DNA of 32,000 nucleotides from Wallemia ichthyophaga EXF-994 (Eukaryota > Fungi > Basidiomycota). The DNA lies in the NCBI RefSeq assembly GCF_000400465.1, contig NW_008806288.1:210001-242000 (forward strand), written 5' to 3'. The notes beneath the pieces are model-generated. The model made no database searches. It was not told the DNA's origin and saw nothing but the letters and a program-made list of their open reading frames with translations. Below are positions 2,349-32,000 of the stretch, one piece after another. Position 1 is the first letter of the stretch. The number at the start of each line of letters is the position of its first letter. The translations under genes were made by a program, and so were the position numbers.

Positions 2349-5300
2349 ATGGACTTAGCGACTGTTTTACTCGGAAGTCTGTCACCAGACACAGCGCAGA
2401 GAATGTCTGCTGAGCAGTATCTCGAGACTTCTCAGTCAGATCCAAATTTCCCGCTCGCGCTCACAGATCTCATCGGCAACGTCGACAACCCAATACACAC
2501 GCGTCAGATAAGTTGATATCTCTCGCGCCCTTTTCCAAGCTTACAAGGTAGTCCACTCAGCTGGAATTATTCTCAGAAAGTACGTCAACGAACGCTGGTC
2601 GCCTTTCTTCGTCGCGTTCAAAGGAAGTCCACCACCACCAGATGTAAGTTTGAGCTATTTGAGCTATTTCCAGGGATTACATGTTGTACTGATACTATCA
2701 CAGATCAAGGATATCATTAGGCAACGCTTGTTCTCTCTCCTCTCAACCTCACACAAGCAGATCAGAACAGCTTGCGCATACGCCTTGGCTTCTATAGCCA
2801 GCTGCGACTATCCAGAGCAATACCCCTCTCTACTTCACGATCTCGCTCAGCTTTTCCAGCAAGCTCAAAGGGATGGTGTTCACGGCGCAATGAGAGTTCT
2901 TCTCGATTTCGTCAAGGCGGATCTTACAGAGACGCAACTCGTCCCTGTCACTCAGGAGCTGCTACCACTATTGCTTCACATCCTCAAAAACCCTACATAT
3001 GCAGACAGCACGCGTGGTTTGACTGTCGCTGTCCTACGCCAGTGCGTCCTTACTCTCGAAATGGTCAAATCGACCTACCCAGATGCTGTTAAAGAGATTG
3101 TGAATAGTGTTATACCAGTGTGGATTGACGGTTTCATTGCTCTTCTCCAAGTACCGCCTCAGAAGGAAACCAGGTCCCAGTGGGGTATTAGGTTCGAGAT
3201 CATTAAGACAATCGCATCCGTCTTCTCGACTTTCAAATCACTCATCACTACAAACAACAACATTGAAAGCTTGACACGCATTTTGATAGATCATTTAGTG
3301 ACACTGTTGCCCATCTTTTACGATCGACAGGTCTATGATACCCAGTCATATGAACAACCTGAAGGCGAAGAGGAAGACGACGGTGCTGCTGTTGAAGAGC
3401 TCATCTGTCCTATTATTGACTTGTTGACTGGTTTTGCGAACAACAAACATACTAAGGGTACCATCGAACAGGCTATTCCATTGCTTGTTAAACTTTCACT
3501 CGAATGGGGTCAAATGACTGTTGAAGATGTAAGCCGTGAGTTTTCGCTCATAAGTATGCTAAGAATCCCATAGGAAGACACCTGGATCTCAGATCCGAAC
3601 GCATTTGTTGATGACGAAGACGATGAAACGGAAAATTACAGCCTAAGAATAGCCACTCATGACTTGCTGGGAGTTCTGCTCGACAGATATCCAACACCAA
3701 CTGCAAAAGTTTTGGGTCCAGTGACTGCTGAGCTGTTGTCTACGTCCCAATCTGCTTCACAAGAGGGTAAGCAGCATTGGTGGAAGCCAATCGAAGCAGC
3801 ATTGGCAGCAATTGGCAACCTTTCTAATCAGCTTGGCGATGAGGACAACGAAGCAGCTGAGCACTTTGATTTGATGGGATTGTGTCAGAGTGTCGTTATG
3901 CAATTTGTAAACGCGAACGAGTCTCCTTTCTTACAAGGCAGAGCATTTGTATTTGCCTCCAAATTTGCCGGTAACCTGCCACCTGATCTCGCAGGCGCAT
4001 TCGTTGATGCTGCTGCCGCGATGCTCAACCACAGCAATGCAGGTGTACCGGTAAAAATCAGCGCTGTGCGCGCGATTCGCAACTTTGCCAATGGACTAGA
4101 TGATGAGATAGTGGGACCAAAAGCATTGCAGATTCTGTCATCGATCGTACCCCTTCTTGCCCACACTACAGAATCGACTTTAGGATTGCTTGTTGAAGCG
4201 GTGGATAGTGTACTCGATACGCTCAACACTGAAGCTTTGACAACAGAACTCGTTGTTCAGCTATCGTCAGTTATTCTGCCAGTCTGGGAGAAGAACGTCA
4301 ATGATCCTCTACTGGCTTCGCAGTTGGATGATCTCTTTGTCACGCTTTCTGAATCAGGCTCCAAGGCCCACTCGGCGCTTGTTGGCATAGCTGTCAAACC
4401 GCTTATCGGCGCTGTTAGTCGCGCTGCACCGGGACAGCCAGGTGGGGAGGATGTTGATGCGCGCTTGTTGGCAAGTTCCGCTATTCAACTTATCAATTCT
4501 ATCGTCAGGGCTAGAAGTGAAGGTCTAGAGCCTGGTGTGATAGCCACGACTTGTCCCGCCCTCTTCAACATACTCGAGAGTGCCGATGATCGCACACTAA
4601 TGCAAGATGGTATTGAGTTGTTGACGACATATATACGCAAAGACATACAAGGGTTGTTGGAATGGAAGAGTGACTCGCTCGTTCGGATTCTCAACATCAT
4701 TGCCAAACTTCTTCAAACGGATTCAGAAGGCAGTGCACTTTTTATCGGCGATGTCGTAACACATCTCTTCCGTAACGTGTCCAAGGATATACTCGACCCA
4801 GCTCTCCCCCAACTTCTCAAAGTAATCTTAGATAGATTGGCACTGAGTAAGACATCAGCATTCACACAGAACCTAGTTATACCATTCACATACCTGATTC
4901 ATACTCGCAGAGAAGTCATTTTGGAATATCTCTCTAATACTGCCGTGCTTGATGTTAATAGTAACAGTATGGTCAGTGGATTGGAGGTTTTGTTGAGAAT
5001 GTGGTGCGATAATGCAGAAACTTTTAGGGGTTTCTGGGCCATTAGAATTAGTACTCTTGCATTAGTGGATCTGTACACTAGTCAAGATCCTCGCCTAGAT
5101 AGCGTAATGGTCAAAGGCGACCAAATTATTGATGAGTCGAATCGGAACACCATTATGACGCGTTCCAAGACCCGCAATGCGCCTATTGAATTTACGAGCA
5201 TACCCTTCCCGCTCAAAGCCATCAAATTGCTTCTTGGTGAAATACAGAATGTGGGCACGTCGGCTGCTAAGTCTAACACTGTCAAAGATGTAGATGAGGA

Positions 5301-5678
5301 TGATGATGATGATGACTGGGAAGATGACGATCCACTTGCTGGTGCTGATGATGAGATCCATTATCTTTCAGGTGGGTTTTCGTGTGGCTAAGTTGTTTTC
5401 ATCTAACTTACGCCAAACAGATCTGCTTTCACCAGGTGGTGATCTTCTCGACGATGGTGATGCAGATGCTGAAGATATGCGCGATGATCCAGACTGTCAG
5501 ATCGACATTGGGGTTTGTTTTTACAAGTCAAAGCTGGCACAACTAACACCGCTCACAGAATTACTTGTCCGACTTCTTAAGAACGGCGTACACAGCTAAC
5601 ACATTCAACACACATGATAGATGCGCACATTTGAGTGCTCAAGAACAGGCTATATTTCAACATGCCATGGTAAATTGA
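2349..5678 (+). CDS. IPO9: Importin-9 / Kap114-like karyopherin-beta
   Basis: Exons 2349-2507, 2557-2643, 2704-3528, 3574-5371, 5421-5512, 5559-5678 (3081 nt). IBN_N motif RQSAGIILRKYVNERWSPFF, IASCDYPEQYPSLL, WISDPNAFVDDEDDE, HEAT-like helical content, acidic loop DEDDDDDDWEDDD and C-terminal D..DDP..QID motif. Confidence 0.9.
2508..2556 (+). other. Candidate AT-AC intron (U2-type signals), importin-9 intron 1, 49 nt
   Basis: CAG|ATAAGT...GCTTAC...GTCCAC|TCA GCT gives RQSAGIILRK. The GT-AG alternative 2512-2560 (donor GTTGAT) gives RQITGIILRK. Confidence 0.7.
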
Positions 5679-5693
5679 TGTAGAAGCCTGTGT

Positions 5694-5714
5694 TGGTTAA
5701 TGGTTAATGGTTAA
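5694..5714 (+). repeat. (TGGTTAA)x3 microsatellite between the convergent importin-9 and seipin stop codons
   Basis: Three exact 7-nt units. Confidence 0.8.
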
Positions 5715-24278: not shown

Positions 24279-27200
24279 TTAATTGTTTCTACTCTTTTTG
24301 TTGCTGCGTGTATCTGAAATACTCGATGAAGCTCGCTTATGCGAAGGCTGAGGACTCATCGTGTTGTATCTATTCCTAAAGTCATTCAGATTGCTCACTG
24401 CCATCTTCTCCAATGCCTTGGCTGATAATGAAACAGGCGCATCTGCTCCATTGTAAAGTATTGCGTTGTGCGTCATTAACTTTATATCACCCTCAAACGC
24501 ATCCACCGACGGATATTGATCTTTTTCCAGTTTCGTCTGTATCAAAGACAGATCTCTCATGTTCTCTTTAGGTATTACTTCGTTATAATTTGGAATACCC
24601 AATGCAATTGGATCAACCTATATATAATCGTTAGCATGTTTCAATTACGCCATTCCAAAACGTACCGGCTGTAAGAACCAGAAAGCATGCTCATTCTTGT
24701 ACCATACTTTCATCATCGATAGCAAGCTCCTCTTTTCATTGTGCGGGATCTTCGGCGTCATTAGTATCTTCCACTCTTTCCTCAAAGCTCTCTCCACTGG
24801 GTCGCAAGTCTGCGCAGTCAACATACTTGTCTCACCAGGACCATTGAATTGTCTGCAATTCTTAAATATTTGTTCTATATCTCCGATGAATTGATCGCCA
24901 TTCTCGTACTTTTTCTCGTCCAACTTCCTGTTTATTGTAGAGAAGTCCATCGGATGCTTGATCTCATCCAGATACGTTGGACAACCATGCAATATGGGGT
25001 CGACTGGCTGTAAGAATATTGCGGCCTCAGGCATGCTCATCAGTTTTCTAATCAAAATCTTGGCTTTTCTGTTATCAAGATGACCGTCCGGTAGCTTTGA
25101 AGGAGTGCTTGAAGATGCTTTGGGAGGTGGAGGCATTTTTTGCACTGGTTTGTTATCTGACAGAGCCAGAAGCTCATCATCGAGTGCGTCTTCGTTGCCA
25201 TTCTGCACTGGAGCAGAAGTAGGAGCTGGAACAGGCGCAGGCGTAGACGTAGGTTCATTTTCTTCTGGTAGACTCTGTTGAGCTGGAACTGACTGTGCTT
25301 TTTCCATAGGTTCTTCTGGTGCCTCTGATACCGTGACCGGAGCTTCAGGAATAGGTTGAGATTGAGATTCTTGCATACTTGGTGCTGCAACAGGCTGTGT
25401 GTCAGCTGGTGTAGCGTCAGTCTGGATTTTTTCTGCGGTTGATTCTGGTTCAGGCGCATCTGATTGAGCAGTTTGCGGTGCTGCCGCTGTATCCACCACC
25501 CCATTAGCTTCAGGTTGCTTTTCCTTATCGCCATTACTATCAACAGGCTTAGGCGGTTTCAGCTTAAGAGAAAGCCTAGGCTTGGCTGGTTGTGCTGGAG
25601 GTGGACTTGGTTTAGATGGCGAAGAAATTGCCGCAGCCGGTTCTGGTTCTGGTTCTGGTTCTAGTGCTGGTGCTGGTTCTGGCCCCGTCGGAGGACTTGT
25701 CATCTTATCATTGACTTGCACAGTAGGCTTACGTCCTGTAGCGGCATTGAGCGTGTTCGTCATTCGCTGCCATTGCTTATCGAAGACTGCATCTAGCTCC
25801 AGCGCGGTCTTGTGCACTGGTGACGATGGACCATTGTAAGTCGTTGCATTTTGAACGATCAACTTAAAATCAGCTTCATATTCGAACCTGTTGGCGTAGT
25901 GTCCACCATCCAACTTAGCTCCCATGGTTCCAATGTCCATTGGCGTTTTAATCACCGAAAAGTAATCAGGCGCACCGTCTCTGACTGGGTCAACTGGATA
26001 TAAGAACCACCCTGCCAACTTGTGTGATTGTAAGCGCTTGTGAAGAGCTCTACAAGCAGTGACGTCTTGACTAGCCATACCATTCCTTTGAGCTTGAGGA
26101 ACAGCTTTGTCTTTCTTCTTTCTAAGCGAAACATTCAATCCACCTCCACCAACAGGTTCAGTAACGTGTCCGTTTGCTGTACCATTCATCTCTGGTACTT
26201 CAGGCTCAGGTGTCTCATCTTCCATACGAACCGGCACAACGGGATCCATACTGACTGGTACAGGCTGCGCTGGTTGTGACGTCGGCGCCTTGAGCTTGAT
26301 CTTCATCGGCATTGCAGATGCTGGCTCTGCTGGCTGATGAGGTGCTGGGGCAGGTAACTTGAATTTAACTTTAGGTAACGGCTCAGCATTGCCTTTGTAT
26401 AGAACATCACAGAGCTGTAGCAGCGTCCATCTAACGTGGTAATCGACTTGAGGGGATAGCAACACAGCCATGATACCCATTCTCAAACTAGCAATTTTTC
26501 CGACATCCTTTCGAAGCCCCTTCAACTGCCGATCCAATTCGCTCTTACTAGAATCTTTCTCTTTCGCTTCGCTCAGCTTAGCATCTTCTTCAATGAATTG
26601 CGGTTCCTTCTTCTGAATAGCAGCCAATTCCCCAGTGGCCATGAGAACAATCAGCGATTCGATCATCGATTGGGCAAGCGACCTTCTGACTACTCTTGAT
26701 TCATCGTATCCAAGTATTGTTGAGAAATATTGAATAATTGGTCGATGGCGGAGAGAACCGAGCAGCATCAAGCAATCGAAAGCGACTATCCTTAAAGGAG
26801 GATAGTTACCCTCTCTGCACGAACTGTAAGTAACGTAAAGGGACGTGTTATGTTTTCTCACCTTGTATAAGGAATAAACAAAGGTGCGTTGTATGGTAGT
26901 ATACCGGCAATCATTAGTTTGACGTTGAATTCAAGGGTAGCTACGGATATAACGTTCTGATAAGATGGTACGAGTCTATCCATGGTTCTATACCTCTCAA
27001 CCTCTTCGACAGCAGCACGTCGAATGAGGGGACCAAATGGATGGTCATCTGCATCCGGATCCTCGTCCTGTTGAAGTACGCTGGCCTCATGCTGAACCGT
27101 CGGCACTAGTGCGATAGCCAAGCAGTTGATGATACCAGATAGGTAATAGCTGTCTGAGTACTAAAACAGAGTAAGCGGTGAGACTCTCAAACAAAAGTCA

Positions 27201-30191
27201 CTCACTCTATTTGTCGAATTGTCATTGTATTTGAGCTGATCGACGAGGAACTCTCTAATGTTCAGCATAGATCTACTCGTTTGATCTCTGATAGAAGTTA
27301 AAGAAACGATGACAGCCTTACGAACGAAATATTCGCTGAGGTCGTCAAAGTTGTTAGCCAGCGGTATACACTTGAAACCAAAAGGATCCATAATTTCTTG
27401 CGGAGGTGGATAGCAGAATCTTGACTGGAATATCTTAAAGAGGTGGAACATTCCAACATAATCCAATTCAGGAGTTGCACAGGTATGCAGCACCATAGCA
27501 GCTTCCATTCTAATTCTAAAGAAGTAATTGGTGACCAGAACAGTCCTGGTTAGTTGAGTGGAAACCAGTTTGGAAGGAATAGACTTGAGCGCGTGGACAG
27601 CTTCCAACTGAGCAACAACATCTCTATCACGCTGTAGTTGGGACACCCACATGAAATCAGGTTGCTCAAAAGTAATCATGGAGATCCATTCAAAGTCTGC
27701 ATCAACTCTGATCCACTCGTACGTTGCTTGTGACATAGCAGCTTCATCATCCTCGGTCCAATCTTCTACCTTCCATCTGTCTCTCTCCGATTCCTGTTCC
27801 CAATCGTTGAGCTGGAAACCCAAATCTATCATACCAATAGCCTCAGCAGCCTCTTCATCACCTTGGGCAGCAGCAGCAGCAGCAGCTTGTCTAGCTTGAT
27901 AACGCTTTGTGTTCCTTCTAACACGCTTATATTTCGTGTTGAAAGGCACATCGAATCTCTTGTTGGGTTCCTTTATATCCAAAACATGCTCATATGGTGT
28001 ACCATCAGCTTCGTGAATTCTAACAGTCATCTGACCTTCAAAAACTTGGGTTGGCCTGTTAAAATGAATTTCAGGTGTATCGGGTGTATGTGCGTCATAT
28101 GCTGGTGATTCTTGCTTTACTGTCATTTCAACGCACATTTTCTTTCTGTTAAAATTGGCTCCAATCATGAATCTAGGTGTACCAGATCCAAAAATCCATT
28201 GATCAGCAAACGTTCTTAAATCAACTCCGGCAACTTTTCTGCAAGTCCTCAAGAATCCATTTGTTGATATAATAACGTCACCAGAAAGCGCGCCCAGGAA
28301 GATTTTTGGCAGAACTCTAGACAATCCATGAGCTGTACCAGATTTAGATAGCTTTCTATCGAGAATGTGCAAGACAAGTGGTGCTTTCAAGAGTAAAAAT
28401 GGTGCGTCGTTATCATTTGGTGGTTCAAGCGCATTTGGTACGCTAAGTGGTGGTAGTTGGCCCGTATCATTCATTGCTAAACGATCCATATCCTTCTTCA
28501 TTCTAAAGAAATACTCATTGTTACCCATAGATTTCTTCAAAAAAAGATTTGCAATATAGCTAGCTAAGCCTTGAACTAGCCACATATCAGACCAAGATCT
28601 TGGCATGATATTAATACCAGACCATTGAGTGGCAAGAGCGTGTGATATTTTATGGCGAGTATCCAACGTCTGTTCGATAGCAGATGCAGGGTGCAGAAGA
28701 TCTAGAGACATGATAACGACAGTAGAATACACAGTGACGTCTACCGGAGGATCATGCACGAAAACGACTTTGAAGGAAGAAAATGGGTACATACCATGCT
28801 CTGAGCTGTAGAAATGAAGAGCACGTGGAACTATAGCTACGGAGGCGGCCAACTCTTTAGCAGAACCAGGTGGACCAAAAGCGTGTAGGGAAGTGGATTG
28901 GGTGGTGCTAGAAGTATGCGGTATTGGTAGGACGTTGAAAGGACCAGCTGCAAAAGCAATATGCTGTACGGAAGTGGGTAGAGATTGAGCAAAGTGGAAG
29001 ATAGTCTTGGAGGATATCGATGGATGAGCGACTTGTTCGACTAAATCACCTGAAGAGACGACAACGACAGGCTCATCTTGTTCACCTTCAACGCCATCCT
29101 CGCCAACAGCACTTAAAAAGCGTGGAGTGATATATTCCAATTCCCACGTACATCTCTCCCAAAGACTGTCAATACAGGGGACCCAACAGCGGGCAGCATC
29201 GGGGCATGTAGGAGAGGTGTAAATGTGAGGGATGCGATAAGGGGAAGTTTCTGTTGGCTTGACGACTTGTAGGCCTTCGAATGGATGAGTGATAGAAAAC
29301 TCAACGAAGATGGTGAGAGGGGCGAAGTCTTGAGAGTTGTTAGCAGCCTCCTTGCTTTCCTTCTCCTTTTCTTTCTCTTTTTCTTTCTCGCTTTGCTTTT
29401 GCTTCTCTTTCTCATTCTCGTCGTGCTTTTCTTGGTTGTGGTTCTCTTTATCCTTCTCTTTGTCATCCATGTGCTCTGCTTGCTCGTCTTTATGCACTGA
29501 TTGCTCTGTACCATTCTCTGCGTGGCCTGCATCTTTCTCTGCTTGCTCTTTATCGTTATTATCTTTCTCAACGTCTGTCTCGTCAATCCGCTTCTCCTTA
29601 TCTTGAGCAGAAGGCTCATCAGGAAGTAGGGAAACCTGATCGCCTACGCCACGCGAGATACAACGAGGCGGGAGGACAATACTCAGCTCGCCTTCATCGC
29701 CTTCAGAAAGGGCAGAATAGACTTTACGCTTGAGTTCGGGATGGCGGTGTACGTCGATCTTGCCGTCTTTGCCATGGCGTTCGCTAAGGGCGATATTCGA
29801 CTGAGGGTCGAAGTGGGTGAAATCAGCGTGAGCGGGGGCAGCGTGAGCGTGAGGTGGGGTGACGAGGACTCTGTGGATATCTGTGGAGGTGTGAGCCAAA
29901 TGGGCGTAAAGGATCACCGCCCAACTCACTCGCCTGCCTCGAATGGATGTTGACCGTCTTGAGAGCGTCTGTAGTGGGAGTGATAGTGAGTTCGGTGAAT
30001 CCCTGAAGAGTGTAAGCGTGATTTCAAGGCGTGCAATTGCCGCTTCACGCACCCTGAAAACACCGCTGAAATCGACCTCGAGACAGACTCGCTGGTGGGT
30101 TGTTTGCGGGCGTTAGAATGACCGCGTAAATTATCAGTATAATCACTTATAAGCTAAAGCCGCGCTTGTGCGCTTCTCGTGAAACGGCCAT
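24279..30191 (-). CDS. TAF2: TFIID subunit Taf2 (aminopeptidase-like fold) fused to three C-terminal bromodomains
   Basis: Exons 30191-30151, 30101-30053, 30002-29930, 29880-27206, 27160-26862, 26814-24666, 24617-24279 (5625 nt, 1874 aa). Motifs FSLTHQRVCLEVDF, ARCWVPCID, WSDMWLVQG, GQMTVRIHEADGTPYEH, EWIRVDADFEW, WVSQLQRDRDVVAQLEA. Three bromodomains follow (see findings). Confidence 0.95.
30102..30150 (-). other. AT-AC intron (U2-type signals), TAF2 intron 1, 49 nt
   Basis: AGC TT|ATAAGT...TTCTAAC...GCAAAC|A ACC CAC CAG gives RGFSLTHQRV. Read-through hits TAA, and the nearby GT lies after that stop. Confidence 0.8.
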
Positions 30192-30220
30192 CTTCACTGA
30201 TCAACTACCTATCTTTCGAG

Positions 30221-32000
30221 ATGATGGCTGTTGCTTCACAAGCGACTTCGAGTGAGGCGATACACCGTCTGATGCACCAATCCACTCAGCCTGTCTCGCT
30301 GGCTGTGATTAATTCCAAACGCAATCCTCCCCATCCGCCTCGCCCGCCACCCAGACAGAAGCGTCAGCGCAGGACTGCTTCCACTGCGCTAGTCCTTCTA
30401 GGAGCCGCAGATACTTCTTGTAGCGATAGAGAGGCTTTATTAGCAGCACTGCGTGATGCAGACAGTAGGATTTGTGGGTCTCCTCTTTTTTCCTGGTTTT
30501 TTCTCATTCTGTGGCGCAGTCGATGGCCAGCCGCTGCTCGAACCCGATCAGTTATTCGCGGTGGGCGATGTAGCGGGACAGCCTCTCTCGCCATCTCCAT
30601 CTCCGTCTCCATCGCCCTCGCTCTCGCCGTCTCAACGTCAGCCTCCTCCCGCTAAGGTCAAAGGCGCGACACCGTTCGAACGCGTTGACGTCGGCTGCAG
30701 CGACGACGACGGCGACGGTGTGGTCGACATCACAGACGAGTTGCGCGAGAAACATCACAAGCGGTGTGAGTACGATGAGCGACGCATTCGCAAACTAGAG
30801 AAAGAGCAACTGGTGCATGACCGGTACAAGTTGCAAGAGAAGCAAGACGCACTCGCGGCGCTTGAGTTGGAGGACAGCGAGGATATACCCGAGGAGGTGA
30901 TAGCACTGTCGAGTGGGATCTCCCTCGAAGACCGCCCACTAGCTCTCGAGCTACAGCAGAAGCTGTTGTACGAGAACGACAAGATGCTCCAACGATACGA
31001 CCTTCTCCTCAAATCTGATATTAAGGGGAGAGTATATCCCAAACCGCAGTACTCCTCTAACCCGTCCCCGTTCGATGTTCGCTGTGTTGGCGATAAGGGC
31101 ACGTACTCCGCCAGCGAACAGATGCGCAGCTTGGAGCAGAGAGTGTTCAAGGTGGACATGCAGTCGCCGTTTAGAGTCAGATTGAAAATGCCTCCCTCGA
31201 CGAGAAAGTCGCTTAAGTCTTCTCAGAATATCTTAGCCTCTCCACTCAGTCGCTTCAGGACGCCTCTGACTCCCAAGACACCTGCTGCTGCTGCTGCCAC
31301 TAGCAATGCTCCTTCGGCTCTCTCTATAGCTGCAGATGCCCGCCTTACCTCACGATCACAAGACAAAAGTAGAAGAAAGTCACAGCGGTCGCTCGTAGCT
31401 TTCGGTGTGAATATACCCAATGAAATCGATAAGGAGCGTGAATTCAGTCTCGTAGATGCAGCCGAGGGTTATGGGCTGTGGACTGGGACAGAGAACGAGT
31501 TTGACAGTAGGAGGATGTGGGAGGACGCTTTGTCGTGCAGAGAGCGAGGAGAAGCGCATGTTTTCGCAACCACAAGTGCAGATGCCGCGAAGCCAACCGT
31601 ATCTCTGCCAGTGGGAACGATGACGACGCCTAAGAGGACTTTAGCTGGGGCTGACGCTGCTTCAGCGTCTGCATCTGCATCTACTTCAACTACGCCTGCG
31701 TCGGATGAAATGGAGTGGGTCGAATCACCTGCATCACCTTCATCACCACCTTCTTCTACGCCTAAAACGTCACGGGAGATGTATGCACAGCTGTCAACAC
31801 CCAAACGAGGCAAGAAACGCGGTAGGAAATCGCCGATGCGCGCTGAAAGCAGTAAAAGTATTAAAATCGATAATAAAAAGACATCATCGGTGACGGGTAG
31901 AGGACGAGGTAGACCGCCGCGGTATGGTGAGAATGTTGAAAACAAACCGCAGGAACCGAAGCTTAAACCGGGAACGGTAACTTCCACGATTAGAGGAAAG
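30221..32000 (+). CDS. SAS4: Sas4-domain protein (SAS histone acetyltransferase complex subunit 4-like); 3' end lies outside the window
   Basis: Exon 30221 (or 30272)-30473, intron 30474-30519 (alternative donor 30465), then a frame open to 32000. DITDELREKHHKRCEYDERRIRKLEKEQLVHDRYKL resembles the Sas4 domain. Also SLVAFGVNIP...EFSL, an SP repeat and AT-hook-like GRGRGRPPR. Domain identity is from recall, not a search. Confidence 0.65.

What the first reader, a model, noticed from the sequence alone, without database searches (positions are those of the whole stretch)
2508..2556. Second ATAAGT...AC intron, in importin-9
Seen in sequence: after ...HTRQ the DNA reads ATAAGT, then a GCTTAC branch-like site and CCAC|TCA GCT GGA. 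AT-AC splicing (49 nt) gives RQSAGIILRKYV. A GT-AG alternative shifted by 4 nt gives RQITGIILRKYV but needs the donor GTTGAT, which lacks the +5 G present in all but one of the other donors I traced. Established: the IBN_N motif is RQ-x-A-x-x-x-L-(K/R), with a strongly conserved Ala. Inference: AT-AC is the more likely junction, though this case is less forced than TAF2 because the alternative is also in frame.
Basis: partly seen in the sequence, partly recalled or inferred. Interest (0 to 1): 0.72.

Follow-up and report, generated by a model that had tools for sequence, protein, structure and literature searches.

The report
Conserved AT-AC intron in fungal importin-9
The first intron of the importin-9 gene of the salt-loving fungus Wallemia ichthyophaga very probably starts with AT and ends with AC instead of the usual GT and AG; mushroom-forming fungi and their relatives share this rare boundary, it seems to descend from a "minor-spliceosome" intron, and many public gene models get it wrong.

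Summary
The window is Wallemia ichthyophaga (99% protein identity). ATAAGT sits at 2508-2513, a CTTAC branch site at 2540-2544, and CAC|TCAGCT at 2554-2556|2557. Removing 2508-2556 (49 nt) joins ...HTRQ to SAGIILRKYV.

AT-AC is the only junction that works in all six Wallemia-lineage sequences. Two of them read TCG, not TCA, so they have no +4 GT-AG option. The same AT-AC intron is present in Armillaria and Kwoniella. It also occurs in 46 of 47 distinct orthologous introns from soil and wood metagenomes. Their donors are AT[A/G]NGT and never ATATCC, and only 17 of 46 offer the shifted GT-AG.

Human importin-9 (RQLA) and yeast Kap114 (RQFA) keep the alanine.

In the early-diverging fungus Calcarisporiella the orthologous intron is a textbook U12-type ATATCCTT...AC. 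This suggests a U12-to-U2 takeover that kept the termini.

GenBank holds five different models of this junction within Wallemia. Only the JGI W. mellicola model encodes RQSAG.

The intron belongs to a known kind, the U2-type "AT-AC II" introns. It is a new, deeply conserved member. No RNA reads were available here.

The parts
2349..2507 (+). Importin-9 exon 1 (MDLATV...NPIHTRQ, 53 codons, ends in phase 0)
   Evidence: Translation. 99% identical protein annotated in W. ichthyophaga. IBN_N domain spans residues 21-96.
2508..2556 (+). Intron 1, 49 nt, AT-AC termini, U2-type signals
   Evidence: Sequence. Orthologous AT-AC introns in 5 other Wallemia-lineage sequences, Armillaria and Kwoniella and in 46 of 47 distinct metagenomic introns.
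2508..2513 (+). 5' splice site CAG|ATAAGT: the U2-type consensus GTAAGT with A at +1
   Evidence: Orthologues carry ATAAGT, ATGAGT, ATATGT, ATACGT and ATAGGT, with +5G and +6T essentially fixed. None carries ATATCC.
2539..2545 (+). Branch site GCTTACA, probable branch A at 2543, 13 nt before the 3' end
   Evidence: It aligns with GCTAAC, GCTAAT and TCTAAC in the relatives. CTTAC is also the best branch candidate in two GT-AG introns of the neighbouring TAF2 gene. Branch-to-3' distances in the window are mostly 10-15 nt.
2554..2556 (+). 3' splice site CAC (the YAC analogue of YAG)
   Evidence: The last three bases are CAC or TAC in every AT-AC orthologue.
2557..2643 (+). Exon 2 (SAGIILRKYVNERWSPFFVAFKGSPPPPD)
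   Evidence: Translation. SAGIILRKYVNERW is invariant in the four aligned Wallemia-lineage proteins.
2512..2560 (+). Rejected alternative: +4 shifted GT-AG (donor GTTGAT, acceptor TCAG|), giving RQITG
   Evidence: The acceptor AG is missing in L001, W. hederae and 29 of 46 metagenomic orthologues. The donor is weak, and Thr replaces the conserved Ala.
2503..2560 (+). Rejected alternative used in the EXF-994 reference model (GTCAGA...CAG, giving HT-P-GIIL)
   Evidence: Inferred from the sequence of P0251. It deletes RQSA. The donor GT is absent in L002/L003 and the acceptor AG is absent in L001/L007.
2512..2538 (+). Rejected alternative used in the 2019 strain models (a 27-nt 'intron', inserting ITY[N/K]VVH)
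   Evidence: P0124 and P0244-P0250. 27 nt is far below the 43-60 nt of the other introns. The insert is absent from all homologues.
2644..2703 (+). Intron 2, an ordinary GT-AG intron (GTAAGT...CTGAT...CAG, 60 nt)
2704..5700 (+). Rest of the importin-9 gene: exon 3 2704-3528, intron 3529-3573, exon 4 3574-5371, intron 5372-5420, exon 5 5421-5512, intron 5513-5558, last exon from 5559. The stop coordinate was not computed. The model is 1026 aa.
   Evidence: 99% identity to W. ichthyophaga importin-9.
30102..30150 (-). Sister case: TAF2 intron 1, 49 nt, ATAAGT...TCTAACG...AAAC, phase 2
   Evidence: The junction GFSL|THQRV matches orthologues and a cDNA-like contig. Same position and phase as the ATACGT...CTAC intron in Stygiomarasmius. 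TAF2 intron 1 is a published U2-type AT-AC intron in human and fly.

Best explanation
Positions 2508-2556 are the first intron of the Wallemia ichthyophaga importin-9 (Kap114) gene. It is removed at AT-AC boundaries, which joins ...HTRQ to SAGIILRKYV.

It is a U2-type ('AT-AC II') intron. Its 5' site CAG|AUAAGU can pair with U1 and U6 at every position except +1. It has an ordinary fungal branch site 13 nt from the 3' end. It ends in YAC. In the second catalytic step, the A(+1)-C(-1) pair replaces the usual G(+1)-G(-1) contact.

The intron is ancient. Basidiomycetes keep it as AT-AC at the same codon boundary. It most likely descends from a U12-type AT-AC intron that the major spliceosome took over when the minor spliceosome was lost. 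The termini were kept because changing either one alone would break splicing.

Shown here: the boundaries, their conservation, and the U12-type orthologue. Inferred: dependence on the major spliceosome, the direction of conversion, and the reason for persistence.
For: (1) AT-AC is the only in-frame junction shared by all six Wallemia-lineage sequences. L001 and W. hederae read TAC|TCGG and have no shifted AG.
(2) Armillaria gallica and Kwoniella dendrophila have ATAAGT...YAC|TCN GCN at the same position.
(3) Among 47 distinct orthologous introns from metagenomes, 46 are AT-AC. Their donors are ATGAGT, ATATGT, ATAAGT, ATACGT, ATAGGT and ATAAGC, and none is ATATCC. Their last three bases are CAC or TAC. 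Lengths run 47-91 nt in all three frames. The serine codon after the junction is TCA 16, TCT 14, TCG 12, TCC 3, so the downstream AG is incidental.
(4) The alanine after RQ-x is conserved in human importin-9 and yeast Kap114. IBN_N scores 48.8 bits for RQSAG against 44.8 and 42.0 for the alternatives.
(5) The JGI models of W. mellicola CBS 633.66 and A. gallica encode RQSA.
(6) The intron's length (49 nt) and branch distance (13 nt) are typical of the window's 15 GT-AG introns.
(7) Calcarisporiella thermophila has ATATCCTTT...TCCTTAAT...CCAC at the same codon boundary.
(8) Basidiomycota lack U12 snRNAs and U12 introns (PMC2846911; PMC11347168).
(9) A G1-to-A change can be rescued by a last-G-to-C change in U2-type introns, and AT-AC II introns are documented (PMC1557818).
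Against: I could not examine RNA-seq or cDNA from W. ichthyophaga, so the junction is inferred from DNA comparison and protein homology.

In W. ichthyophaga itself the +4 GT-AG is in frame, so minor use of it cannot be excluded.

The U12 origin rests on one non-Dikarya orthologue. Its branch-like TCCTTAAT lies about 26 nt from the 3' end, further than I recall being optimal for U12-type introns. I did not check whether Calcarisporiella has a minor spliceosome.

Whether the JGI RQSA models rest on ESTs is unknown.
Confidence: 0.92

Rival explanations
1. The intron is an ordinary GT-AG intron shifted by 4 nt (2512-2560), and the protein reads RQITGIILRKYV.
For: It has canonical dinucleotides, is in frame and has the same length. 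The 2019 GenBank models of W. mellicola use this solution. Eleven other basidiomycete models read RQ-[MI]T.
Against: The acceptor AG is absent in L001 and W. hederae and in 29 of 46 metagenomic orthologues. The donor GTTGAT lacks the +5G present in 15 of 15 other donors. Thr replaces the alanine kept in human and yeast, and the IBN_N score drops by 4 bits.
Confidence: 0.04
2. One of the other published models is right: GT(2503)-AG(2560), giving HT-P-GIIL (EXF-994 reference), or a 27-nt intron 2512-2538, giving RQ-ITYKVVH-SAG (2019 strain annotations).
For: Both are deposited gene models with GT-AG termini.
Against: The first deletes the invariant RQ-x-A. Its sites are absent in relatives: there is no GT in L002/L003 and no AG in L001/L007. 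The second needs an intron of 27 nt with no branch site, where the window's smallest intron is 43 nt. It also inserts seven residues found in no homologue, one of them polymorphic (N/K) among strains.
Confidence: 0.02
3. The intron is removed by a minor (U12-type) spliceosome.
For: It has AT-AC termini. Its orthologue in Calcarisporiella is a U12-type intron.
Against: The 5' site is ATAAGT, not ATATCC. Orthologues vary at +3 and +4 as U2-type sites do, and none of the 46 AT-AC metagenomic introns has ATATCC. The branch site is CTTAC or CTAAC, not TCCTTAAC. Basidiomycota lack the minor snRNAs and U12 introns.
Confidence: 0.02

Closest known systems
U2-type AT-AC ('AT-AC II') introns, e.g. human SCN4A intron 2 and SCN5A intron 3, and TAF2 intron 1 of human and Drosophila (Sheth et al. 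2006, PMC1557818; de Wolf et al. 2021, PMC8280824)
   Same: AT and AC termini. The 5' site equals the major-class consensus except at +1 (ATAAGT). An ordinary branch site. Conserved boundaries in orthologues. Extreme rarity (0.003-0.008% of introns in animals).
   Different: It lies in importin-9, and I found no paper that describes this intron. It is fungal and only 49 nt long. It is conserved as AT-AC across Basidiomycota and has a U12-type orthologue outside Dikarya. Dependence on the major spliceosome is inferred here, not tested.
U12-type AT-AC introns (minor spliceosome)
   Same: The terminal dinucleotides. Same position and phase as the U12-type intron of Calcarisporiella importin-9.
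   Different: It has no ATATCCTT 5' site and no TCCTTAAC branch site. The host phylum lacks the minor spliceosome.
Documented U12-to-U2 intron conversions (Burge et al. 1998, as cited in PMC1557818, PMC2846911 and PMC10639083)
   Same: A same-position intron is U12-type in one lineage and U2-type in another that lost minor splicing.
   Different: The conversions described in the papers I read (e.g. Trichinella to C. elegans) are reported simply as U12-to-U2 changes or splice-site shifts. Here the AT-AC termini were retained over a long period, with rare later escapes to GC-AG (Sporobolomyces) or GT-AG (L045).

Membership tests
U2-type AT-AC (AT-AC II) intron | The intron begins with AT and ends with AC at the true exon boundaries | tested here: met
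   It is the only junction conserved and in frame in all orthologues read. It restores the RQ-x-A motif. This is DNA and protein evidence only.
U2-type AT-AC (AT-AC II) intron | The 5' splice site matches the major-class consensus apart from position +1 (criterion of Sheth et al. 2006) | tested here: met
   CAG|ATAAGT against CAG|GTAAGT. Orthologues are AT[A/G]NGT with +5G and +6T fixed.
U2-type AT-AC (AT-AC II) intron | Excision depends on U1/U2/U4/U6 and not on U11/U12/U4atac/U6atac | not testable with these tools
   Inferred from the reported absence of minor snRNAs and U12 introns in Basidiomycota.
U2-type AT-AC (AT-AC II) intron | The spliced mRNA carries the AT-AC junction | not tested
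   No W. ichthyophaga transcripts were available. Indirect support: the JGI models encode RQSA, and an intron-free, cDNA-like Logan contig from an agaricomycete-like fungus reads RQSASIVLRKY.
U12-type AT-AC intron | 5' splice site ATATCCTT | tested here: not met
   The window has ATAAGTTG. None of the 46 AT-AC metagenomic orthologues, nor the named basidiomycete genomes read directly, has ATATCC.
U12-type AT-AC intron | Branch site TCCTTAAC about 10-15 nt from the 3' end | tested here: not met
   The window has GCTTACA, and the relatives have GCTAAC or TCTAAC.
Importin-9 / Kap114 (importin-beta family) | N-terminal IBN_N domain plus importin-9 HEAT repeats, with importin-9 as the closest characterised relative | tested here: met
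   IBN_N at 48.8 bits. Human importin-9 is the best match among solved structures (E 5e-33), followed by yeast Kap114. HEAT_IPO9_c is recorded on the 99%-identical protein. The EXF-994 record is named Importin-9.

The most novel reading that the evidence does not exclude
Importin-9 intron 1 of Basidiomycota is a 'fossil' of a U12-type AT-AC intron. When the minor spliceosome was lost, its 5' site and branch site changed to major-class signals. The AT-AC ends have since been held in place across the phylum. Either end mutating alone would block the second splicing step, so the pair sits in a fitness valley. Only rare lineages escaped, to GC-AG or GT-AG. If so, AT-AC II introns in general, TAF2 intron 1 included, may be captured minor introns rather than relics of an old U2 subclass.
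Probability: 0.65. Interest if true: 0.6.

Novelty: new member of a known kind. Interest (0 to 1): 0.5.

Why it matters
First, annotation. This one junction is modelled five different ways within Wallemia alone. Among 120 public basidiomycete importin-9 representatives, at least 39 read into the intron or shift the site, and 31 more have no recognisable RQ...LRKY N-terminus. Gene predictors that allow only GT-AG and GC-AG damage a conserved motif of the cargo and Ran-binding N-terminal domain.

Second, evolution. U2-type AT-AC introns are among the rarest intron classes. This one gives a natural series at a single site. The site is U12-type AT-AC in an early-diverging fungus. It is U2-type AT-AC in Wallemia, Armillaria, Kwoniella and the mostly agaricomycete-like metagenomic sequences. 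It is GC-AG or GT-AG in two further sequences (Sporobolomyces and metagenomic locus L045). That makes the origin of AT-AC II introns, and the co-variation of first and last intron bases, directly testable.

Third, two such introns (importin-9 and TAF2) lie 28 kb apart in one small genome, which argues for a genome-wide census.

Tried and rejected
- ORF-based scans for candidate introns with arbitrary terminal dinucleotides gave similar counts for every dinucleotide pair. They did not discriminate and were abandoned in favour of hand-traced introns.
- The first protein search, with the N-terminal 357 aa, returned only three relatives.
- The first metagenome scan, with Wallemia-only patterns, found nothing. 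A second scan with agaricomycete patterns succeeded.
- Rfam found no RNA gene in the window.
- The TAF2 protein search returned only relatives of about 55% identity or less in its top 120. I therefore could not examine TAF2 intron 1 in the closest Wallemia relative.
- No paper holds both 'IPO9' and 'U12'.
- Read-through of the intron was considered and rejected, because it hits TGA after two codons.
- AT(2508)-AG(2551) splicing was considered and rejected: 44 nt shifts the frame.
- The GTCAGA(2503)-AG(2551) option (TLHSAG) was rejected. It has the lowest IBN_N score, and that AG exists only in the window.

Full report
**What is in the window**

The + strand carries an ATG at 2349. Exon 1 ends ...CAC ACG CGT CAG at 2507 (HTRQ). 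Then come ATAAGT (2508-2513), GCTTAC (2539-2544) and CCAC (2553-2556), followed by TCA GCT GGA ATT ATT CTC AGA AAG TAC GTC. Reading straight on gives ATA AGT TGA, so an intron has to be removed.

Four GT-AG options and one AT-AC option can be drawn:
- AT(2508)-AC(2556), 49 nt, giving RQ|SAGIILRKYV.
- GT(2512)-AG(2560), 49 nt, giving RQ-IT-GIIL.
- GT(2503)-AG(2560), giving HT-P-GIIL.
- GT(2512)-AG(2538), 27 nt, giving RQ-ITYKVVH-SAG.
- GT(2503)-AG(2551), giving T-LH-SAG.

The rest of the gene has ordinary GT-AG introns (2644-2703, 3529-3573, 5372-5420, 5513-5558) and encodes a 1026-aa protein.

**Identity of gene and organism**

The protein has an IBN_N domain. Its best match among solved structures is human importin-9 (E 5e-33), followed by yeast Kap114. 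A full-length search gave 99% identity to Wallemia ichthyophaga proteins, 85% to W. hederae, 78% to W. mellicola, and about 40% or less to the other basidiomycetes listed. The EXF-994 reference record is named Importin-9. The window's GC content of about 45% and its short introns fit the published genome: 45.35% GC, 11,786 introns, mean length 61 bp (PMC3849046). The neighbouring genes are a kinase, DAO, seipin, TatD, Brr2, a GATA factor, an amidohydrolase, a C2H2 protein, a ThiF/E2-binding enzyme, a bromodomain protein and TAF2.

**Protein-level test of the junction**

IBN_N scores 48.8 bits with RQSAG, 44.8 with RQITG and 42.0 with TLHSAG. Human importin-9 (RQLASVILKQYV) and yeast Kap114 (RQFALLSLRK) align without gaps and keep the alanine two residues after Q.

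**DNA-level test within the Wallemia lineage**

I read the orthologous site in five further sequences:
- Wallemia sp. (Logan contig L001): CAG|ATAAGT...GCTAACG...CTAC|TCGGCT.
- W. hederae: CAG|ATGAGT...GCTAACA...TTAC|TCGGCT.
- W. mellicola: CAG|ATAAGT...GCTAATA...TTAC|TCAGCG.
- Two AT-rich metagenomic relatives (L002, L003): CAA|ATAAGT...TCTAACT...ATAC|TCAGCA.

Intron lengths are 49, 51, 51, 47, 52 and 52 nt, covering all three frames. The interiors barely align, but the six donor bases, the branch motif and the final AC are conserved. With AT-AC, all six give RQ|SAGIILRKYV. The +4 GT-AG needs TCAG after the AC, and L001 and W. hederae read TCGG, so they have no such option. The EXF-994-style donor GT is missing in L002 and L003.

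**Beyond Wallemia**

Armillaria gallica has CAG|ATAAGT...GCAC|TCTGCG, and its JGI model reads RQSASIVLRKYV. Kwoniella dendrophila has CAG|ATAAGT...ATAC|TCCGCA, and its deposited model (RQ-IS-VLLQQ) uses a GT-AG seven bases further on and loses SAG. Sporobolomyces johnsonii has a GC-AG intron (GCAAGT...CAG) at the same codon boundary.

A metagenome scan with agaricomycete patterns returned 80 loci. Of these, 69 had a recognisable junction, representing 47 distinct introns:
- 46 are AT-AC and one is GT-AG.
- Donor hexamers are ATGAGT 27, ATATGT 9, ATAAGT 6, ATACGT 2, ATAGGT 1, ATAAGC 1 and GTCAGT 1. None is ATATCC.
- The last three bases are CAC 28, TAC 18 and CAG 1.
- Lengths run 47-91 nt in all three frames.
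- The first exon-2 codon is TCA 16, TCT 14, TCG 12, TCC 3, with two GCN. The 'AG' that creates the shifted alternative is therefore just a synonymous-codon accident.
- The shifted GT-AG is available in only 17 of the 46 AT-AC introns.

**Class of intron**

The donor is the major-class consensus with A at +1. Across orthologues it varies at +3 and +4 exactly as GTRNGT sites do, and keeps G at +5 and T at +6. The branch site is the ordinary fungal CTRAY type. In the window it lies 13 nt from the 3' end, like those of the 15 GT-AG introns I traced (43-60 nt long, all with +5G, branch distance mostly 10-15 nt). CTTAC is also the best branch candidate in two TAF2 GT-AG introns.

Basidiomycota are reported to lack minor-spliceosome snRNAs and U12-type introns (PMC2846911; PMC11347168). 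U2-type AT-AC introns ('AT-AC II') are documented: 15 in human, 6 in mouse and 3 in fly. A G-to-A change at the first intron base can be rescued by G-to-C at the last base (PMC1557818). I therefore file this intron as AT-AC II. Major-spliceosome dependence is inferred, not tested.

**Origin**

In Calcarisporiella thermophila (phylum Calcarisporiellomycota, outside Dikarya) the intron between RQ and AAGIALKNY reads ATATCCTTTTTG...TTATCCTTAATTCC...CTCCAC (92 nt). That is a perfect U12-type 5' site, a TCCTTAA(T) branch motif about 26 nt from the end, and AT-AC termini. The simplest reading is that an ancestral U12-type AT-AC intron was converted to major-class signals in the basidiomycete line while keeping its ends. 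Later escapes went to GC-AG (Sporobolomyces) or GT-AG (one metagenomic lineage, L045). The literature treats conversion as running from minor to major (PMC10639083). This step rests on one outgroup and is an inference.

**Public annotation**

Within Wallemia the junction is modelled five ways:
- EXF-994 reference: HT-P-GIIL.
- 2019 W. ichthyophaga strains: RQ-ITY[N/K]VVH-SAG.
- W. hederae: HT-HLNIQANKRFY-SAG.
- 2019 W. mellicola strains: RQ-IT-GIIL.
- JGI W. mellicola CBS 633.66: RQ-SA-GIIL.

Only the last agrees with AT-AC. Among 120 basidiomycete importin-9 representatives:
- 47 read RQ-xA.
- 39 continue with M or I after RQ. These are MS or IS insertions, MT or IT shifts, or short deletions, which is the expected trace of reading into AT[G/A]AGT.
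- 31 have no recognisable RQ...LRKY N-terminus.
- 3 fall into other categories.

A caveat applies: 'IS' alone cannot tell ATAAGT from ATATCC. Every basidiomycete AT-AC intron I read directly had AT[A/G]NG[T/C].

An intron-free, cDNA-like contig seen in eight sequencing runs reads RQSASIVLRKY. Without its genome this is only suggestive.

**The sister case**

TAF2 on the minus strand starts at 30191 and has ATAAGT...TCTAACG...AAAC at 30150-30102 (49 nt, phase 2). The GT alternative runs into TTA TAA. The spliced GFSL|THQRVCLEVDFSG matches agaricomycete TAF2 proteins and a JGI cDNA-like contig (GFTISHQKV). Stygiomarasmius scandens has ATACGT...CTGAC...CTAC at the same position and phase, and its deposited model inserts 'YVF'. 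TAF2 intron 1 is already published as a U2-type AT-AC intron in human and Drosophila.

**Verdict**

It is a new, deeply conserved member of a known rare class, with a likely U12-type ancestry and a clear cost for automated annotation. What is missing is RNA evidence from W. ichthyophaga itself and more outgroups for the origin.

Noticed in passing
window 30102-30150 (- strand); L004 about 1556-1615: TAF2 intron 1 is also ATAAGT...AC (49 nt, phase 2). An AT-AC intron (ATACGT...CTAC) sits at the same position in the agaric Stygiomarasmius scandens. TAF2 intron 1 is a published U2-type AT-AC intron in human and fly, so it may date back to the common ancestor of fungi and animals.
   Followed up: partly
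L008 1028-1119 (Calcarisporiella thermophila): The orthologous importin-9 intron is a textbook U12-type AT-AC intron (ATATCCTTT...TCCTTAAT...AC). I did not check whether this fungus has minor-spliceosome snRNAs.
   Followed up: partly
L011 751-828 (Sporobolomyces johnsonii); L045 (metagenome): The intron at the same position is GC-AG (GCAAGT...CAG) in Sporobolomyces and GT-AG (GTCAGT...GCAG) in one metagenomic sequence with a Sporobolomyces-like exon-2 motif (SASFALKKY). The Microbotryum saponariae model P0239 reads through an 'IS...DH' insertion, which suggests AT-AC there.
   Followed up: partly
Proteins P0124-P0266: Public importin-9 models disagree at this junction: there are five versions within Wallemia. 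At least 39 of 120 basidiomycete representatives carry insertions, shifts or deletions that begin with M or I right after RQ.
   Followed up: yes
window 30003-30052 and 29881-29929 (- strand): Two TAF2 GT-AG introns are stop-free and keep the reading frame open, so a plain ORF finder reads straight through them (the 983-codon ORF 30112-27164). The same holds for importin-9 intron 2 (2644-2703) and for intron 1 of the relative L001 (51 nt, read through in P0001).
   Followed up: partly
L002 525-576 and L003 2384-2435: The AT-rich relatives have an extra GT-AG intron inside exon 1. They lack the intron that the window has at 3529-3573. Introns have thus been gained or lost around an unchanged AT-AC intron.
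   Followed up: no
window 24648-30191 (- strand); L004: TAF2 is followed directly by a bromodomain gene both in the window and in Stygiomarasmius. This gene order is conserved between Wallemia and an agaric.
   Followed up: no
window 30158-32000: This GC-richer stretch (52-55%) has long open frames on both strands: + strand 30444-32000 (519 codons, no Pfam hit) and several on the - strand. The coding strand is unresolved.
   Followed up: no
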